Source: Styela clava (Eukaryota). From it: 64,000 nucleotides of DNA. Below the pieces are notes generated by a model that searched no databases, was not told where the DNA came from, and worked only from the letters and a program-made list of their open reading frames with translations. The stretch is taken from contig NC_135260.1 in the NCBI RefSeq assembly GCF_964204865.1, positions 9,796,001 through 9,860,000 on the forward strand, read 5' to 3'. A program made the position numbers and the translations under genes. Below, in pieces: positions 48,833 to 62,600 of the stretch (position 1 is the stretch's first letter; each line of letters begins with the position of its first letter).

Positions 48833-51800
48833 TTACATCCACTGTGATTCGTCAGTGAAGTCACCCAATGGTTGCTGAGCAATGGGCTGATTACCCCACA
48901 TGTTTTGAGAATTTTGACCCCCCTCAGTCTGCCTTCGTTTTCCACCGACACCATCGCCATTGAAGTTAGCCTTACGTTTGCCACCTAGATTTGGTTTTCC
49001 ACGGGCTCCTCCGCGGCCGCCCCTGACCCCCTGCCCACCGCGACCACGGGCCATGAAGTTCATTGGGCCACCCATGCCCATACCCATGCTGATCGGTGCA
49101 GAAGAAAAGAAAAAATGAATGATTTAAATTTTGATAATCGAATTGAAAAAAATTTCAAATTTTTCAGACTATGTTTAAATTTTTTTTTATCACATATCAT
49201 GACAAAGCCCCTGTAATAAATAGATATTTTTCCAAACTGTTCGGCATCATGCTCGTACATCACATTCGAACACTTAACTTTTTGAGGAAATATTAGATTT
49301 TTATTACTTTTAGGGACAATTAATTGGGTGTCTGGAACGATATTCTAGCCCATAACAATATAATAACTGTCTATTACAATAATAATATGACTTGCTCACC
49401 TGCCTCTGTATCCTCTCATCATCATATTTCCGCGTCCTCGAAAGCCAGGTCCACCCATTCCCATTCCACCAAAATACGGGTCATCGTAGCCTCCGCCAAA
49501 ACCACTTCCGAAGCCCATGTAATCGTAATAATCATCGACGAATCCGCCACTGTTGTACGGCATCGGTGGAAAACCCATTGGGCCCATATGTCCACCACGT
49601 GGTCCTCTTCCGCGCTGCCCTCTTTGATTGAACTGCCCGGGTATGCCCATGCTGCAATAGCATAAGGACAGAGTTAAAAATGAATTTTTGCATTGCCGAA
49701 AAATAAAAATGCTTCTCTACGTACTGCTGATTCATTTTTCGTTCCATTTGTCTTTCCTTCTTTTTTTTATCAACTGGTTTTGCAAGGCTGATTTCAATTG
49801 GTTCACCTTCCAGATTCAGACCGTTCAGCTCTTGCATTGCCTGTAAATGAAGTAAATATTGGAACAGAATACAGTAGTACTTCTTCAGACACTGTTCTAC
49901 TTATAGAGATCGATAAAAGAAAAGCAGAACCTTACCTTCAAAGCCTGCTCTCTATCTTTAAAATGCACGAAAGCGTAGTCCTTGATTTTTTTCACTCTTT
50001 CAATTTCGCCATATGAACTAAATGTTGTCTGGATTACTTCTTCGGAAGCTTTGGTCGCCAAATTTTTCAGGTACAGAACCTTTACCTGTAAAAAATAACG
50101 TAAAGGTTGATTAGCTAGGTTACACAACTGCAAAGACCCCAAACTTAAATTTCATGAAAAGTGTTGACGGGGCTAAGTTCCGACATCTTAAACTCTTGCA
50201 GCCATTTAACGATAACTGTCTAAACGAAACGAGTCCTGACTCAATGAGACCTAACTGAGTGAGTGACTCGACCATACTTCTCATCAAAAGGTGTAAAAAA
50301 TTAGGTTGGGCTGATGACCAATGACGAGCAGCTATGAGTTTAGGGACTTTTACCCAACACCGAGAACGATAAATACCAATAATATATAGGTATATATATA
50401 TACCTTTGACATGACTTCATCAGATGGATTATCGATCGGATCAGCCCAGTCCACCGACACAAGATTATTCCAAACTTTTGTTTTTCCCGATCCAAGTTTT
50501 CGCCGTGCTTGCGATGCAGACTTGTGATCAGTGTATTCAAGGAAGCAGAATCCTCGGTTTTTCGACTTGTCCTCGGTTTGATGATAAACAATGACATCTT
50601 TTAGACAAGCTGCAACAAAAATGTTTTACATTACTTCAAAATAAGATTAAATAATGTCTGTCTCTGGTCACGGATGTCTGCAGATGAAATAAATTTGGCA
50701 TTGGCAATAACTGAATTATCAGAAATCAATAAATTGTTACAGTTTAGACTGAAAGATGCAGAAGGGGTGGGTGCCTCATGTATACTTACTTATTCAGTAA
50801 TCAGCATCTTACAGTTATATCACAATTTATAAACAAATTTATTTGCTATGTATATGACCACCTCAGATCTGTTGAGCTTATAAGTAGGTTTCATCACATA
50901 TAAATATGACGGGGAAAGAAGTATTCTCATCACTGGTGGTAAATCAATCAAAATAGTAAAAACAAATAATATTAAAAATGAGGGCAAAACAATCTTACGT
51001 GATAAACTCTGGAACTCTTCAAAAATTTCATCTTTTGTTTTATTTTTAGGTATTGAACCGATAAACAGGCGACAATTTGATTGTGACAGGCAGACGCCAA
51101 GAAATTTTTTCGGTTTTATTTCGTAATTGTCCAGCTGTGAAACCAGAATGCATTGTTTAAATGAGTAAAAATCTGTTTGACCTAATCTGGCTCAGTGGCA
51201 CTTCCAATAAAGCTTTCTCAATCAAAATCTCAGAGATGAACTTGTGATGACAATGTATTTTTTTTTATATATATTTCAGTAATCTAACCAATTTCACGGA
51301 TTCCACTGCCATGTCTCTCTGTACGAATGACGCGAAACCGTAGCCTCTATTTTGCCCTGATAATGGTTCCATCATTAGTCTGAAATCCCATATTGTACCG
51401 GCTTTTTCCAGAAGTGGTATGATTTCATCTTCAAAGACATCTCTTGGAATTCGACCAATGAATACCTGTTATATAGGATACAAACATAATAATACAAAAC
51501 TGAAACATTGGAAATAGAATTTGCATACTTATCCTGGGAAAGAGGAAAGACTGCTTGTATGGTATCTCATTTCGTTACTTGTGCATTTCGGGGACGGGAA
51601 TAGATAACCAGTTACTTGATTCAGATACATGGGCTTATTATTAATGGAGGAGTAACCAATCAGGAGTCATGTGAACTATCCTACGAAACTTCTCACATAT
51701 ACATTCAAACTCGAGATTCTCTGCAGGATAATCAGAGGTGTGATGGCACACATGTTCCTAACACCTAGCTTAATCTGCCAAACACCTGAGAGTTATTGAA

Positions 51801-53411
51801 GAACAAACAGGTAAGAAAAATACTTGAAACCCTGGTCCTGGCTGTGAATACTCAAATAAACCAAGATGCTCATTTCAAAACTTCATTTTTTATACATTGT
51901 CAGTTCACCACCTCAGATCTGTTGAGCTAGTAGTTGTATCATCATGTATTAATATGACGGGGAAAGAAGTATTTTCATCATCGGTGGTGAACCAAATCAC
52001 AATGTAAAACCAATTTATTTTTGAATAAAACCAGACAGACAATGTGATTATACGAAATTTTACTTTTAGATCCACTCTTACTTTACACAATGATATTCGA
52101 ATAAATACCTGGCAGCCTGGTCCTGGCTCTTCACCATCATAAACTTCTGTGGGTGGTGGTCCACCATATCTTCGTTGACCTGTGGTTACATCTAAGGAGT
52201 ACTTTGTTCTATCCAGAAGAGCCTACAACGAATGTAAAAATGGATTTCATGAAAATATACAAAATAATTATCAGAAAATTATCAATTGCTCAGTCCAATT
52301 AGTAATTTAGTGAAGTACAAAGAAAAAGTTATGTAGGACAGAATTTTAAAATTTTTTCCCCAAAATAACTTCTATATTGCGTACTTGAATATCGTCTTCA
52401 TTAGGCCCAACTTTTTGGCTGAGATTGGTTCTTCCATCTTTTTCTGCCTTGAGTCTCTGTCGGTAGATTTTCATTACACCGCAAAGAAAGGCACTTTTGT
52501 TCTGGACATGCTGTAAAATTAGAAACATACGATTATAATTCGCTCAGTGCTATGCAATATTACAATTTATTTTACAACTAAATCTAATTGCACAAGACTA
52601 AGAGATATTGTGAAATATGAGCTTTACCCCATTGCTTTTTTTACCTGAAGATTAGAATCTTTAAACTGCTTTAAAACAGCGATAGCTCCATCCTCTTCGA
52701 GCTCTTTTAATGCCTCAATCGCTCTTTCATCTAATTCACTGTATTGGACTAGACCTACAACAGAAGTTGCAAATGATTAATTATTTAAAAGCAATGGAAA
52801 AGTCACCAATTGGAATATGAGATTAGAATGTCACGTGGCAAGGTTTTCTTCGGTTTAGAGATTAGTTTGATTATAAATACCCAAATTCGTTCAACACATT
52901 TGTAACATGAAATTACCTCAATATTCAAGTTGTAAGTCGCATATTTTTAAAGTATCGCGATTTGGATGTATACATATATAATGAATTTAAATCCATTTTA
53001 ACACTCGAAGACCAATTCATTTCCCCGACCAGTGAGTTTCAAAAGTTTAAATATTGTCAGTTCACCACCTCAGATCTGTTGAGCTTGTAGTTGTATCATC
53101 ATGTATTAATATGACGGGGAAAGAAGTATTTTCATCATCGGTGGTGAATCAAATCACAACGTAAACCATAGAAAGTAGAAATGATATATTTTCAAATCCA
53201 AACAAACAACCATTGTGATAAGGAAATCTACTGTTAGATCCACTCTTACTTTACACAATGATAATCGAATAACAAACGTTATACCTTCTACAAAAATCGC
53301 ATCTAGAGCTCCGGCAACTTTTTCCGTGCAGCCAGCTTCTATTAGACTTTGATAATGTTCTGATTTCATAACTTCATCTTCATTCTCAATTTTGGCCACA
53401 ACGTCTGTCAT
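48833..53411 (-). CDS. SYNCRIP: hnRNP R/Q (SYNCRIP-like): acidic N-domain, three RRMs, RGG tail
   Basis: Exons 53411-53285, 52754-52645, 52510-52385, 52222-52109, 51465-51289, 51134-50999, 50609-50404, 50085-49936, 49840-49725, 49651-49400, 49088-48833. Peptides HVQNKSAFLCGVMK, LDVTTGQRRYGGPPP, KNRGFCFLEY, RVKKIKDYAFVHF, WGNQPIAQQPL. Probably co-orthologous to HNRNPR and SYNCRIP. Confidence 0.93.
50857..50940 (-). ncRNA. Intronic box C/D snoRNA, SNORD12/snR190-like, copy 1
   Basis: ACCACC/GGTGGT-type terminal stem, C box GTGATGA, guide CTTCTTTCCCCG, D' CATA, C' GTGATGA, guide AAGCTCAACAG, D box CTGA; same strand as the host gene. Confidence 0.88.
51511..51785 (-). mobile_element. SINE family C copy in an hnRNP intron
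   Basis: Shared blocks ttatcctggg, ccagttacttgattcagat and taatcagaggtgtgatgg. Confidence 0.6.
51903..51992 (-). ncRNA. Intronic box C/D snoRNA, SNORD12/snR190-like, copy 2
   Basis: 10-bp terminal stem GTTCACCACC/GGTGGTGAAC, C box ATGATGA, the same two guides, D box CTGA. Confidence 0.9.
53061..53148 (-). ncRNA. Intronic box C/D snoRNA, SNORD12/snR190-like, copy 3
   Basis: 9-bp terminal stem, C box ATGATGA, guides CTTCTTTCCCCG and CAAGCTCAACAG, D box CTGA. Confidence 0.9.
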
Positions 53412-59684: not shown

Positions 59685-62600
59685 CAGTGGCGGCGCGTCA
59701 ATAGGGCCAACCGGGGCAATGCTCCGGTTGTTTTTTCGGTATAAAAAAAAATATTCGAAAAATACCTCAATATCGGTTGCACAGACTGTCTACACTAGCC
59801 ATATTCTCCCGACATGGTTCATTTTTCGCTCGCAAAGCCTTCGCCGAACGTCGACGGGGCGACGCCGATTTTGCCCCGGTTGCTTATTGTATATCGTATT
59901 CTCTCTTTTATCTTCCACTCGCCGCGTTTGTCTCGTTTGTTTTCTGTTTCTTTTACTAAATCATCGGGGCCGATCGGGGCTAGCCACGAAATTATGACGA
60001 CACAATGCCGACGTTTCTTACAACAACGTGTTGACATATTCACGCATTCCTTCTCGTTCGTTGGTTGCTTGAAGAGTTGATAGTTTCCTCGCCTTCGTTT
60101 TTGTCGCTTGTTTCGCTATTTGAATCAGTTAGAGACCTTTAGTCCATTTGCTTTCGATTTTCCACATTCTTTTTGAGCTCCTCACTTCTTTCCGGCTTCG
60201 CATTTCTTAGCCTTAGACCTCATAATGAATAAGGTTGGTGCACTACTTTGCACTCCGTTTTCGCAGCTGCCGCTGGAACAAAAATTAGAGGTACAACGTC
60301 TTGGGCCTTATCAACCAAAAAATTGTTCACTGGAACAATCCCATGACGGAGGAAAGCGTCGGCGTACATTCTGCACAGAAACTTGGTATAAAAAACACGA
60401 ATGGTTGTGTTACAGCGAGGACAAAAATGCACTTTTTTGTTTTTATTGCCTACTTTTTGCTACCGCCCGTGACTCACATTGGTGTAAATTTGGTTTTAGA
60501 GATCTTAAACATCTTTCCGAGCGTGCCAGGGATCATCAATCTTCTATGGAGCATCTGGACAATGCAGTAAAATACCGAACATTCGGAAATGTTAATATTG
60601 CAGCACAGTTGGATGAAGGACGCGCGGTTTCTATTCGTCGGCACAACCAAAACGTCGAGAAAAACCGCCATGTTCTCGATCGATTGATAGATGTTTTGAA
60701 GTTCATTGGTTGTCACGAGCTGTCCTTCCGTGGGCACGATGAACGGGCTGGCTCTTCTAATAGAGGGGTATTTTTGGATATGGCGGAATACACCGCATCC
60801 CTAGATACAGTATTGAGAGATCATCTTGATGCCGCAACTGTTTCGAAAGGGACATCTAAGGATATCCAAAATGATTTGCTCGACTCAATGTATAAAATTT
60901 ATTTACAACATTTGGCTCTGGAAATTGAGAATTGCCAGTTCCTTTCGATTCAGTCTGACGAGACAACTGACATCACGTGCGTTTCCCAACTGGCTGTAAT
61001 TTTTCGGTTTGTGAAAGATGGTAAACCTACCGAGAGATTTCACAGCTTTGTACCAATCGTTGATTGCACGGCTTGCGGGATATCGGCTGTACTGGAAAAA
61101 GTGTTACAGCCTTACAACGCGAAGTCAAAATTGATAGCTCAAACTTATGACGGCGCGGCAGTCATGTGTGGGTCGAAACATGGTGTTCAAGTTTATATAA
61201 AAGAAGATTTTCCTCATGCGCATTTCTTACATTGTTATGCACACCAATTTAACCTCGTTATTAAAAATATGTGTCTTGATACCCCTCTCGTCCGTATATT
61301 TTTTGCAAATGTTTCGGGGTTTTCTTCATTTTTTTCCGTTTCGCCGAAGCGCTCTGACCTTCTTCGCCAGATATGTAGCCGCCGTCTCCCAGCTTGTGCA
61401 CCAACACGTTGGAATTTCCAATCACGCGTGGTGCAGGGCGTGTCCGAAATTAGGTCTGAGCTCATTGAGTGTTTCAATGGCATTCAGAGCTCTCCGGTTT
61501 GGGACGAACGCTCTGTGAGGGAGGCGGCAGGTCTAAAGCGTCTGCTAGAAGATGGTGAGTTTTCATTTTTTCTCGCTTTTTTCTCCACAATATTCTATCA
61601 CGTGGATGTATTATACGGCGCATTGCAGTCAAGGCTAATGGATGGAGCGTCTGTGCAGTCGTGTATTTCAGACTTCTGCGATGCTGTATCTCGTATCCGG
61701 GAAACAATAAAATACGACGACACATGGAGTGCTTCTTTACGCCGCGGGCAAACAACGCAGCGTTTGATTTTGTCTGCAAAGGAATGCTGTGACATTCTGG
61801 TGAATCAAATAGGCGATTGTCTGCGCACTGAACACCTTGCCGCGTTCTCTTTGATGGACCCCAAAAAATTTTCAAAATTTGCACGTCAATTTCTCATCCA
61901 TTTGTTGGCTACTGTCTCCAAATTTTACCCCATGATAAACGTGGGTAAATTGGAAAATGAATTGCGATGTATATACACCAATCAAACTTTTTTGAACATC
62001 ACATCAACTTGCGCGCTCTATGGGGTCCTCATAGATAACACTCTAGTAACTACCTTTGCGGCGTCTGCAAAATTTCTGGACATCATTTTGACGACGCCTA
62101 TTTCTTCCGCCGACGCAGAGCGAACATTTAGCACGCTGAAGCGTATTAAAACGTATCTCAGAAACACAATGAAGCAAGATAGATTAAATTCCTTGGCTGT
62201 TTTATCCATTCACAGAGACGTTATTTCTGGGATGCATGACTTTAATCAGCGCGTTATTGAGCATTTTGCTTCCAAGAAACCGCGGCGTGTTGCATATATG
62301 TTCAAGCAGTAGAAGTCTAGCAGCATATATATCTATGAGTGAGCGACGCATGTCCTTATCTTTGCATTAACTTTCCTTTCTTCATAGTAACGTTTTAAAC
62401 CTTATTTTAGGTTTTGTCTGCTTTCCCGAAGTTTCTGTTAATATGTCATTGTATTTATCTGGGTAAATATTGCCTTTCCTTTTGAAAGAGGTTTCAAAAT
62501 AAACTATGTCTATATTTATTAATCCATTGACTTGGACCGGTTTTAAAGACACTTTCTTATCGTTAAAAATTGTCGCTTTTGCCGATTGGTTGTTACCGAT

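What the first reader, a model, noticed from the sequence alone, without database searches (positions are those of the whole stretch)
50857..53148. Triplicated double-guide C/D snoRNA in hnRNP R/Q introns targeting two adjacent 28S rRNA sites
Seen: three intronic copies with intact C/D'/C'/D boxes and two conserved guides. Established: the eukaryotic LSU sequence GCGGGGAAAGAAGACCCUGUUGAGCUUG borders the peptidyl-transferase loop. Guide 1 (CUUCUUUCCCCG) pairs with CGGGGAAAGAAG and by the D'+5 rule marks yeast-numbered G2395, the SNORD12/snR190 site. Guide 2 (AGCUCAACAG) pairs with CUGUUGAGCU and marks G2409, 14 nt downstream, which I do not recall in the human or budding-yeast methylation sets (needs checking). 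I do not know hnRNP R/Q as a host for this family; human SNORD12 paralogs sit in ZFAS1.
Basis: partly seen in the sequence, partly recalled or inferred. Interest (0 to 1): 0.75.

Follow-up and report, generated by a model that had tools for sequence, protein, structure and literature searches.

The report
Three SNORD12-type snoRNAs in hnRNP-Q introns
Three introns of a sea-squirt hnRNP R/Q gene each carry a copy of a known small nucleolar RNA (SNORD12 type) whose second guide has been re-aimed at the ribosomal RNA stretch right next to the first target, a spot that is methylated in plants but not in humans or yeast.

Summary
Three box C/D snoRNA genes lie on the minus strand at 50854-50943, 51904-51991 and 53061-53148. 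Each sits in its own intron of an hnRNP R/Q (SYNCRIP-like) gene, and they are the only copies in the 377-Mb genome. Rfam places them in SNORD12 (two of three above the gathering score).

The D' guide pairs perfectly over 12 bp with this species' own 28S at the SNORD12/snR190/snR107 site (G2678 here). The D guide pairs perfectly over 10-12 bp with 28S 2690-2701, which starts 3 nt after the first target ends. The +5 rule points to G2692, 14 nt downstream of G2678.

Guides and boxes are invariant among the paralogs, and in a related organism's contig, while the spacers vary.

Published tables show that this second position is 2'-O-methylated in Arabidopsis, tomato and tobacco. It is guided there by a different snoRNA, SnoR29. 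Human and yeast have no equivalent entry.

In fungal members of the family the D-side antisense element pairs with 25S domain I and does not methylate. The D guide here could therefore be an accessory or chaperone pairing rather than a methylation guide.

A stable small RNA and methylation were not shown. I class this as a new variant of a known family, of moderate interest.

The parts
53061..53148 (-). snoRNA copy C (88 nt). C box 53138-53132, D' guide 53126-53115, D' (CAUA) 53113-53110, C' box 53102-53096, D guide 53087-53076 (12 bp), D box 53073-53070, 9-bp terminal stem.
   Evidence: Rfam SNORD12 44.5 bits. Pairings to 28S 2675-2686 and 2690-2701. Fold. D box position.
51904..51991 (-). 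snoRNA copy B (88 nt). C box 51981-51975, D' guide 51969-51958, D' 51956-51953, C' box 51945-51939, D guide 51928-51919 (10 bp), D box 51916-51913, terminal stem plus an extended outer stem.
   Evidence: Rfam SNORD12 45.5 bits..
50854..50943 (-). snoRNA copy A (90 nt, the most diverged at 84% identity to B). C box 50933-50927, D' guide 50921-50910, D' 50908-50905, C' box 50897-50891, D guide 50880-50869 (11 WC + 1 G-U), D box 50866-50863.
   Evidence: Rfam SNORD12 36.0 bits, below the gathering score of 43..
52755..53284 (-). Host intron holding copy C (about 530 nt).
   Evidence: Joint 52752/53283 (cut +2) with CT..AC ends on the + strand, seen in X1, X5 and X6.
51466..52108 (-). Host intron holding copy B (about 643 nt).
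   Evidence: Joint 51460/52104 (cut +5) in X1, X5, X6 and X10.
50610..50998 (-). Host intron holding copy A (about 389 nt). The lower boundary is my reading of the loose-end letters against the window.
   Evidence: Exon pieces start at 50999 and their loose ends match the window up to 50609.
48833..53411 (-). Host gene, an hnRNP R/Q (SYNCRIP-like) gene. ATG at 53411. Exons seen in RNA contigs: 53285-53411, 52645-52754, 52385-52510, 52109-52222, 51289-51465, 50999-51134. Further RRM and RGG-rich ORF pieces run down to about 48833.

Best explanation
These are three functional paralogs of the SNORD12/snR190/snR107 box C/D snoRNA family. I infer that they are released from three introns of the highly expressed hnRNP R/Q pre-mRNA.

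Both antisense elements bind one continuous 27-28-nt stretch of 28S domain V, at the root of the peptidyl-transferase centre. The D' guide forms 12 bp (13 with a G-U) with 28S 2675-2686. With D' read as CAUA, this places G2678 (the equivalent of human G3878/Gm3899, S. pombe Gm2483, Arabidopsis Gm2396 and yeast G2395) at position 5.

The D guide, next to a perfect C/D motif, forms 10-12 bp with 28S 2690-2701 and places G2692 (the equivalent of Arabidopsis Gm2410 and yeast G2409) at position 5.

I predict that fibrillarin methylates both riboses. I also predict that each duplex serves as the adjacent 'extra' pairing of the other, and that together they hold this stretch unfolded until the snoRNP is released.

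Shown here: the sequences, family membership, intron positions, both complementarities to the species' own 28S, and conservation of guides over spacers. Inferred: snoRNP assembly, both methylations, and any chaperone effect.
For: - Rfam SNORD12 hits.
- The two guide matches are the best rRNA matches of each copy. Duplex energies are -23.7 kcal/mol (D' guide) and -16.8 to -20.9 kcal/mol (D guide).
- Low chance expectation: 107 of 20000 shuffles and 3 of 481 background 10-mers.
- 0 of 22 guide columns vary among the paralogs, against 11 of 28 spacer columns.
- A contig of another organism (X10, record 9) matches 53068-53141 with unlike flanks. All located differences (4 substitutions and 3 inserted letters) lie in spacers, outside both guides and the D', C' and D boxes.
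- The host is spliced and deeply covered in 3 studies.
- The SNORD12 site is methylated in human, S. pombe (whose D' is also degenerate, CCUA) and Arabidopsis.
- The second G is methylated in Arabidopsis (two RiboMeth-seq studies), tomato and tobacco, so it is a tolerated and usable site.
- Five Arabidopsis sites (G2392, G2396, G2410, U2411, U2422) map with one offset (+282) onto G, G, G, U, U in this 28S.
- Adjacent primary and extra pairs placed in different spacers are common in yeast and Arabidopsis.
Against: - No raw-read or small-RNA data were available. The contigs cover snoRNA plus flanking intron at low depth (3-21), so they do not show a discrete stable RNA.
- D' lacks the GA of CUGA. 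The D' region is predicted to pair 6-8 bp with the C' box, much like the internal stem discussed for the non-methylating snR190.
- Within this family, S. pombe ASE2 (upstream of box D) and S. cerevisiae box B pair with rRNA without methylation, and snR190 does not methylate G2395.
- Only 3 nt separate the two targets, so both duplexes may not fit one snoRNP at the same time (my inference).
- 4 of the 8 'other letters' that table 8 counts for the X10 contig were not located in table 3.
Confidence: 0.5

Rival explanations
1. Single methylation guide plus accessory pairing. The D' guide directs Gm2678. The D-side element is not a methylation guide but an 'extra base-pairing' or chaperone element that strengthens binding next to the target and keeps the neighbouring strand open, as described for many yeast and Arabidopsis snoRNAs and for ASE2/box B of this family.
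For: - van Nues 2011: 13 yeast snoRNAs, including snR190, carry conserved elements complementary to sequence immediately beside the target, sometimes in the second guide region.
- Arabidopsis: 45 of 104 Nm sites have extra pairs, more than half immediately adjacent and often in the other spacer. The guide for the SNORD12-equivalent site (SnoR28) uses a 7-bp major pair plus an 8-bp extra pair.
- S. pombe ASE2 pairs but does not methylate, yet it is needed for optimal Gm2483 and for 60S biogenesis.
- Human and yeast lack this Nm.
Against: - The element sits in exact canonical register next to a perfect C/D motif. Pairing starts at position 3 and position 5 lies inside a perfect 10-12-bp duplex.
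- I know of no feature in the sequence that would block fibrillarin there.
- The same nucleotide is methylated in plants.
Confidence: 0.3
2. Pure chaperone or placeholder, like S. cerevisiae snR190. Neither G is methylated. The snoRNP clamps 28S 2674-2701 during early pre-60S assembly until a helicase removes it.
For: - snR190 has the same D' antisense element but does not methylate G2395, and acts through base-pairing.
- The D' box is degenerate, and a D'/C' internal stem is predicted here.
Against: - The orthologous G is methylated in human, S. pombe and Arabidopsis.
- snR190-specific features are absent in these 88-90-nt RNAs: there is no long internal stem-loop, and no Watson-Crick run of 8 or more to the first ~1250 nt of 28S, which include domain I, other than the terminal-stem 9-mer of copy A.
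Confidence: 0.12
3. Non-functional relics. These would be intron-borne snoRNA pseudogenes or retroposed copies that are no longer processed into stable snoRNPs.
For: - Stable small RNA is not shown.
- Copy A scores below the Rfam cut-off.
- The copies lie 244-438 nt from the 3' splice sites rather than the short distance typical of vertebrate intronic snoRNAs (distances; the 'typical' distance is recalled).
Against: - All boxes, both guides and the terminal stems are kept in three copies whose spacers and flanks have diverged, and in another organism's contig.
- They are the only SNORD12-type genes found in the genome, so no other gene found would cover the site.
Confidence: 0.05

Closest known systems
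SNORD12/SNORD12B/SNORD12C (human), snR107 (S. pombe), snR190 (S. cerevisiae); Rfam RF00581, clan CL00044
   Same: - Box C/D architecture.
- An antisense element upstream of D' against the same H73 strand of LSU domain V, with the same target G (human G3878/Gm3899, S. pombe Gm2483, predicted yeast G2395).
- A degenerate D' box, as in S. pombe (CCUA there, CAUA here).
- Three paralogs in separate introns of one host, as in human ZFAS1.
   Different: - The D-side antisense element. In fungi it pairs with 25S domain I (S. pombe residues 333-343; yeast box B) and is unmethylated. Here it pairs with 28S 2690-2701, which starts 3 nt after the first target ends, and no domain-I match exists.
- It also departs from the Rfam consensus in that segment.
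- The host is a protein-coding hnRNP R/Q gene rather than a lncRNA (ZFAS1) or a U14-linked unit.
- There is no long internal stem-loop as in snR190.
Arabidopsis SnoR29 (AtsnoR29-1/-2) and SnoR28
   Same: - SnoR29 uses its two guides on the same rRNA stretch: G2392 with one guide, and G2410 (plus U2411) with the other.
- G2410 is the position predicted here for the D guide.
- SnoR28 targets G2396, the SNORD12 site, with a short major pair plus an adjacent extra pair.
   Different: - These are different families. There was no Rfam hit to plant families at E up to 10.
- In SnoR29 the downstream G is read by the D' guide and the partner site is G2392, not G2396.
- In plants, two snoRNAs share the work that one RNA would do here.
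Accessory ('extra') base-pairing in box C/D snoRNAs (van Nues et al. 2011; van Nues and Watkins 2017), and double-guide snoRNAs such as U24
   Same: A second complementarity to the rRNA immediately beside the primary target, placed in the other spacer of the same snoRNA.
   Different: Here the second element has full canonical guide geometry, so it may itself direct methylation. U24's two neighbouring target sites are my recollection. The papers I read mention U24 only for multi-site modification.

Membership tests
SNORD12/snR190/snR107 (Rfam RF00581) | Covariance-model score at or above the curated gathering score (43 bits) | tested here: met
   B 45.5 and C 44.5 bits. A scores 36.0 bits, below the cut-off (E = 1.3e-4 in the 8-kb search). 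So 2 of 3 pass.
SNORD12/snR190/snR107 (Rfam RF00581) | C box, D box and terminal stem | tested here: met
   RUGAUGA and CUGA in 3 of 3 copies. The terminal stem is 8 bp in B and C and 6 bp in A in the MFE folds.
SNORD12/snR190/snR107 (Rfam RF00581) | Antisense element upstream of D' complementary to the H73 strand of LSU domain V, selecting the conserved G | tested here: met
   12 WC bp to the species' own 28S 2675-2686 in 3 of 3 copies. With D' read as CAUA, position 5 is G2678. Equivalence to At G2396 / human Gm3899 / S. pombe G2483 rests on offsets in published tables.
SNORD12/snR190/snR107 (Rfam RF00581) | D-side antisense element (ASE2/box B) complementary to LSU domain I (described for the fungal members) | tested here: not met
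   No Watson-Crick run of 8 or more between the internal regions and the first ~1250 nt of 28S. The D-side element pairs with 2690-2701 instead. This trait is documented for fungi and called 'relatively small' in human. It is not part of Rfam's cut-off.
SNORD12/snR190/snR107 (Rfam RF00581) | Stable snoRNP (fibrillarin, NOP56, NOP58, SNU13) and methylation or chaperone activity | not testable with these tools
   Only assembled contigs of probable RNA runs were available. They show intron coverage but no RNA ends.
Canonical dual methylation-guide box C/D snoRNA | At least 10 bp to the target directly upstream of box D, with position 5 paired | tested here: met
   10 (B), 11 (A) and 12 (C) WC bp starting at position 3 from CUGA. 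Position 5 pairs with G2692.
Canonical dual methylation-guide box C/D snoRNA | Consensus D' (CUGA) and C' boxes able to form the internal kink motif | tested here: inconclusive
   C' is perfect. D' is CAUA and lacks GA. S. pombe snR107 is active with CCUA, whereas snR190's divergent C'/D' motif is inactive.
Canonical dual methylation-guide box C/D snoRNA | 2'-O-methyl present at both predicted nucleotides | not testable with these tools
   No RiboMeth-seq data were reachable for this species.
snoRNAs with accessory (extra) base-pairing | A second conserved complementarity immediately beside the primary target, in another spacer of the snoRNA | tested here: met
   The targets are separated by 3 nt in 28S. 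The elements lie 29-31 nt apart in the snoRNA and are invariant in the 3 copies. The pattern is described.

The most novel reading that the evidence does not exclude
A chordate ribosome carries a 2'-O-methyl G in the strand just after H73 at the root of the peptidyl-transferase centre (28S G2692), a site so far listed only for green plants. It is installed by the D guide of a SNORD12-family snoRNA whose ancestral domain-I tether has been swapped for this adjacent guide. One snoRNP would then methylate two Gs 14 nt apart and clamp 27-28 contiguous nucleotides of the PTC root.
Probability: 0.4. Interest if true: 0.55.

Novelty: new variant of a known kind. Interest (0 to 1): 0.4.

Why it matters
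The SNORD12/snR190/snR107 family is under active study. Its members combine a methylation guide at the root of the peptidyl-transferase centre with a second antisense element that acts as a pre-60S folding chaperone in yeasts.

This ascidian version keeps the first element exactly. Its second element is in perfect guide register and aimed at the directly adjoining strand. This suggests the second element is evolutionarily re-targetable.

It also yields a concrete, cheap test: RiboMeth-seq at two named Gs. The test would tell whether an animal uses a site otherwise listed only for plants. It would also tell whether adjacent double pairing serves methylation, chaperoning, or both.

The finding adds hnRNP R/Q as a protein-coding host for this family. 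If only the first G turns out to be methylated, this is an ordinary ortholog with a well-formed accessory pairing.

Tried and rejected
- **Metagenome scan** for the double-guide pattern. It found 7 stretches. None has a C box or terminal stem, so these are chance matches. This says nothing about relatives.
- **Own-genome scans.** The D-guide + D-box pattern gave 3 extra hits against 2 control hits, none snoRNA-like. My C-box + guide-1 pattern used a spacer of 6 N where these genes have 5, so it missed the real copies and only returned 2 one-mismatch chance hits. That call is uninformative.
- **RNAcofold of snoRNA plus target**. It cannot draw both duplexes at once because they cross in the joined notation, so it gives no verdict on simultaneous pairing.
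- **A whole-28S duplexfold shuffle script** timed out. I replaced it with exact-match shuffles.
- **Domain-I pairing as in fungi:** none found. A motif check of 28S against the Rfam consensus D-side segment was uninformative.
- **Literature.**
  - A whole-word search for the second site under human or yeast numbers (G3892, G3913, G2409 and the Gm forms) listed 12 papers, none about rRNA.
  - The main text of the Drosophila Nm map has no SNORD12 or Gm3899.
  - The main text of the Didemnum ncRNA paper has no SNORD12.
  - In the 12 rows shown of 202 papers, no row holds a SYNCRIP or HNRNPR term together with a snoRNA-host term.
- **Supplements** are closed and I did not request them. Several could bear on whether adjacent pairing is ancestral and whether other animals methylate this G: S. 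pombe Supplementary Fig. 2b and Data 1, van Nues Supplementary Figs S3/S4 (the snR190 extra pair), and the Drosophila and Arabidopsis supplementary tables.
- **Organism.** 'Ascidian/sea squirt' comes only from earlier unchecked scan notes.
- **Big protein searches** were not used. PDB and Pfam settled the host.
- **Exons** were searched one by one.


Full report
**What is there**

The stretch 50857-53148 holds three related 88-90-nt elements, all on the minus strand: A at 50854-50943, B at 51904-51991 and C at 53061-53148.

Rfam's SNORD12 model (RF00581) matches all three end to end. B scores 45.5 bits and C 44.5 bits, above the gathering score of 43. A scores 36.0 bits, below it. A whole-genome run of the same model returns only B and C.

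Each copy has these features:
- a C box (A/GUGAUGA);
- a 12-nt antisense element;
- a degenerate D' box (CAUA);
- a perfect C' box;
- a second antisense element of 10-12 nt;
- a D box (CUGA);
- a terminal stem.

BLAST with copy B and a double-guide pattern each find exactly these three places in the 377-Mb assembly and nothing else.

**Host and position**

Contigs from three studies of the same organism are spliced across this region. Their joints have GT..AG ends on the minus strand, and the exons are 53285-53411, 52645-52754, 52385-52510, 52109-52222, 51289-51465 and 50999-51134.

Searched exon by exon, with no joined model made, the exons hit:
- PDB chains named hnRNP R (E = 1.4e-23), hnRNP Q and Drosophila Syncrip;
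- Pfam hnRNP_Q_AcD (23.5 bits, below its curated cut-off of 26) and RRM_1.

So the host is an hnRNP R/Q (SYNCRIP-like) gene, and the three snoRNAs sit in three different introns (about 530, 643 and 389 nt). They are not in strictly consecutive introns. Two short introns without a snoRNA lie between C and B, and one lies between B and A.

The copies lie 55-136 nt from the 5' splice site and 244-438 nt from the 3' splice site.

Introns B and C share about 230 nt from the 5' splice site through the snoRNA. Copy A shares little beyond the snoRNA itself. B/C is therefore a recent duplication of an intron segment, and A is older. B and C have extended outer stems.

**Targets**

I took 18S, 5.8S and 28S from this genome's own rDNA. 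In every copy the two longest Watson-Crick matches to any rRNA are as follows:
- the D' guide against 28S 2675-2686 (12 bp, or 13 with a G-U);
- the D guide against 28S 2690-2699 in B (10 bp), 2690-2700 in A (11 bp) and 2690-2701 in C (12 bp).

Duplex energies are -23.7 kcal/mol for the D' guide and -16.8 to -20.9 kcal/mol for the D guide.

Chance is low. 107 of 20000 shuffles of the 10-mer have any perfect site in the rRNAs. Only 3 of 481 other CTGA-anchored 10-mers of the window do. Landing 3 nt from the first target is rarer still.

Counting five from CUGA gives G2692. Counting five from CAUA gives G2678, 14 nt upstream.

**Conservation**

Among the paralogs, 0 of 22 guide columns vary against 11 of 28 spacer columns (p = 0.001).

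A 465-nt contig from a run of another (coded) organism matches 53068-53141 with unlike flanks. The four substitutions and three inserted letters that the tool locates all fall in spacers. Both guides and the D', C' and D boxes are untouched. Table 8 of that call counts 8 'other letters', so up to four differences are not located.

The same run also holds a low-depth, almost identical spliced host contig, probably carry-over. I therefore treat the relative as supportive evidence, not proof.

**Mapping to known sites**

*First site.* Passages in PMC8536666 give yeast G2395 as the predicted snR190 site in H73, not methylated, with Um2417 and Um2421 nearby. Passages in PMC11971394 show that:
- snR107, snR190 and SNORD12/B/C are orthologs;
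- S. pombe Gm2483 depends on ASE1 (with D' = CCUA);
- human SNORD12 serves G3878.

*Second site.* Table 1 of PMC8583080 equates Arabidopsis Gm2396 with human Gm3899, and Um2422 with human Um3925 and yeast Um2421. It also lists Gm2410 with no human or yeast equivalent.

Applying one offset (+282) to Arabidopsis G2392, G2396, G2410, U2411 and U2422 lands on G, G, G, U, U in this 28S. Hence G2678 is the SNORD12 site and G2692 is the Arabidopsis Gm2410 position (yeast G2409).

Other published data on that position:
- PMC8053127 assigns G2410 (and U2411) to the D' guide of SnoR29, whose other guide serves G2392. It assigns G2396 to SnoR28, with a 7-bp major pair and an 8-bp extra pair.
- Table 2 of PMC11542601 lists the site in tomato and tobacco (Gm2412) and as predicted in Ostreococcus. 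The human and yeast columns are blank.

So the second site is absent from the human and yeast entries in these tables but is an established plant Nm.

**How it most likely works**

The C/D motif is canonical and the D guide is in exact register, so by the +5 rule G2692 should be methylated. The D' guide is the family's conserved element, and I expect it to give Gm2678 as in human, S. pombe and Arabidopsis.

The two targets are contiguous. The 5' end of the D' guide and the 3' end of the D guide both sit at the C/D end of the snoRNP. Each duplex can therefore act as the adjacent 'extra' pair of the other. [quoted passage not shown]

Binding would sequester the 5' strand of H73 and the following strand (H74 by my recollection) until release.

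I give this dual-guide reading 0.5.

**What speaks against it**

This family is the textbook exception. snR190 does not methylate G2395 and works as a placeholder. The D-side ASE2 of S. pombe snR107 pairs with 25S 333-343 without methylating it, yet it is needed for 60S biogenesis.

The D' box here lacks GA, and the D' region can pair with the C' box.

The rivals are:
- accessory pairing plus a single methylation (0.3);
- pure chaperone (0.12);
- relic (0.05).

Expression of a discrete small RNA is not shown. Contigs cover snoRNA plus intron at depth 3-21 against hundreds to more than a thousand for exons, and contigs cannot show RNA ends.

**Comparison and novelty**

These genes are members of SNORD12 by the curated model and by the ASE1 target. 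They differ from the characterised members in three ways:
- the D-side element targets the adjoining domain V strand rather than domain I, with no domain-I complementarity at all, and it departs from the Rfam consensus there;
- the host is a protein-coding hnRNP R/Q gene;
- they are small, with no snR190-type stem-loop.

Functionally the closest analog for the second guide is plant SnoR29.

Earlier unchecked notes of this scan report other multi-copy intronic C/D families in this genome, in MYBBP1A, TPGS1 and CRTC. Triplication across the introns of one host therefore looks like the genome's habit, not a special feature.

In the 12 rows shown of 202 papers, none couples SYNCRIP or HNRNPR with a snoRNA-host term. 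No paper in the searched library mentions the second site under human or yeast numbering.

**Verdict**

This is a new variant of a known family, with interest about 0.4.

Supplements were closed and not requested.

Noticed in passing
window 60225-62312 (+): An intact 695-aa ORF with DUF4371 and hAT C-terminal dimerisation domains. It is a hAT-type (ZMYM1-like by recollection) transposase gene without stops, in a locally GC-richer stretch (0.43 against about 0.34).
   Followed up: partly
window 51466-52108 and 52755-53284 (-): The introns holding copies B and C share about 230 nt from the 5' splice site through the snoRNA (a 55-nt block at 89% and a 120-nt block at 96%). The intron of copy A shares only the snoRNA. 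A 26-nt copy of the exon-4/intron boundary (52103-52128) also lies inside intron B at 51818-51843. This hints that a segment including the splice-site region was duplicated.
   Followed up: partly
window 51879-52016 and 53036-53173 (-): Copies B and C have outer stems extending the terminal stem (about 20 paired positions in B; fold z-scores -2.6 and -2.2). Copy A does not (z -0.5). This may help processing far from the 3' splice site.
   Followed up: partly
snoRNA D box + 3' stem versus 28S 250-265: A G-U-rich 14-16-nt complementarity between the D box/terminal-stem strand of all three copies and 28S 250-265 near the 5' end. Copy A also has a 9-nt WC match of its 5' stem to 28S 304-312. These are probably chance, since those snoRNA parts are occupied in the snoRNP.
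   Followed up: no
Read-laying run X10 (another organism), records 8 and 9: The same run holds a diverged snoRNA homolog with unlike flanks (record 9). It also holds a nearly identical spliced host-mRNA contig at depth 2.4 (record 8). The latter looks like carry-over from organism A within the same study.
   Followed up: no
L025 (G000:C6:470510-470532): A C-box-like TGATGA, then a 10-nt near-complement (one G-U) of the same 28S stretch, then CTGA. No C' box, D box or terminal stem follows, so it is probably chance.
   Followed up: partly
same genome, other pieces (scan notes s1-813338, s1-829433, s1-819904): Earlier unchecked notes describe other multi-copy intronic C/D snoRNA families in protein-coding hosts (MYBBP1A with four copies, TPGS1 with three, CRTC with three). 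The MYBBP1A family is also said to target the 28S peptidyl-transferase region.
   Followed up: no
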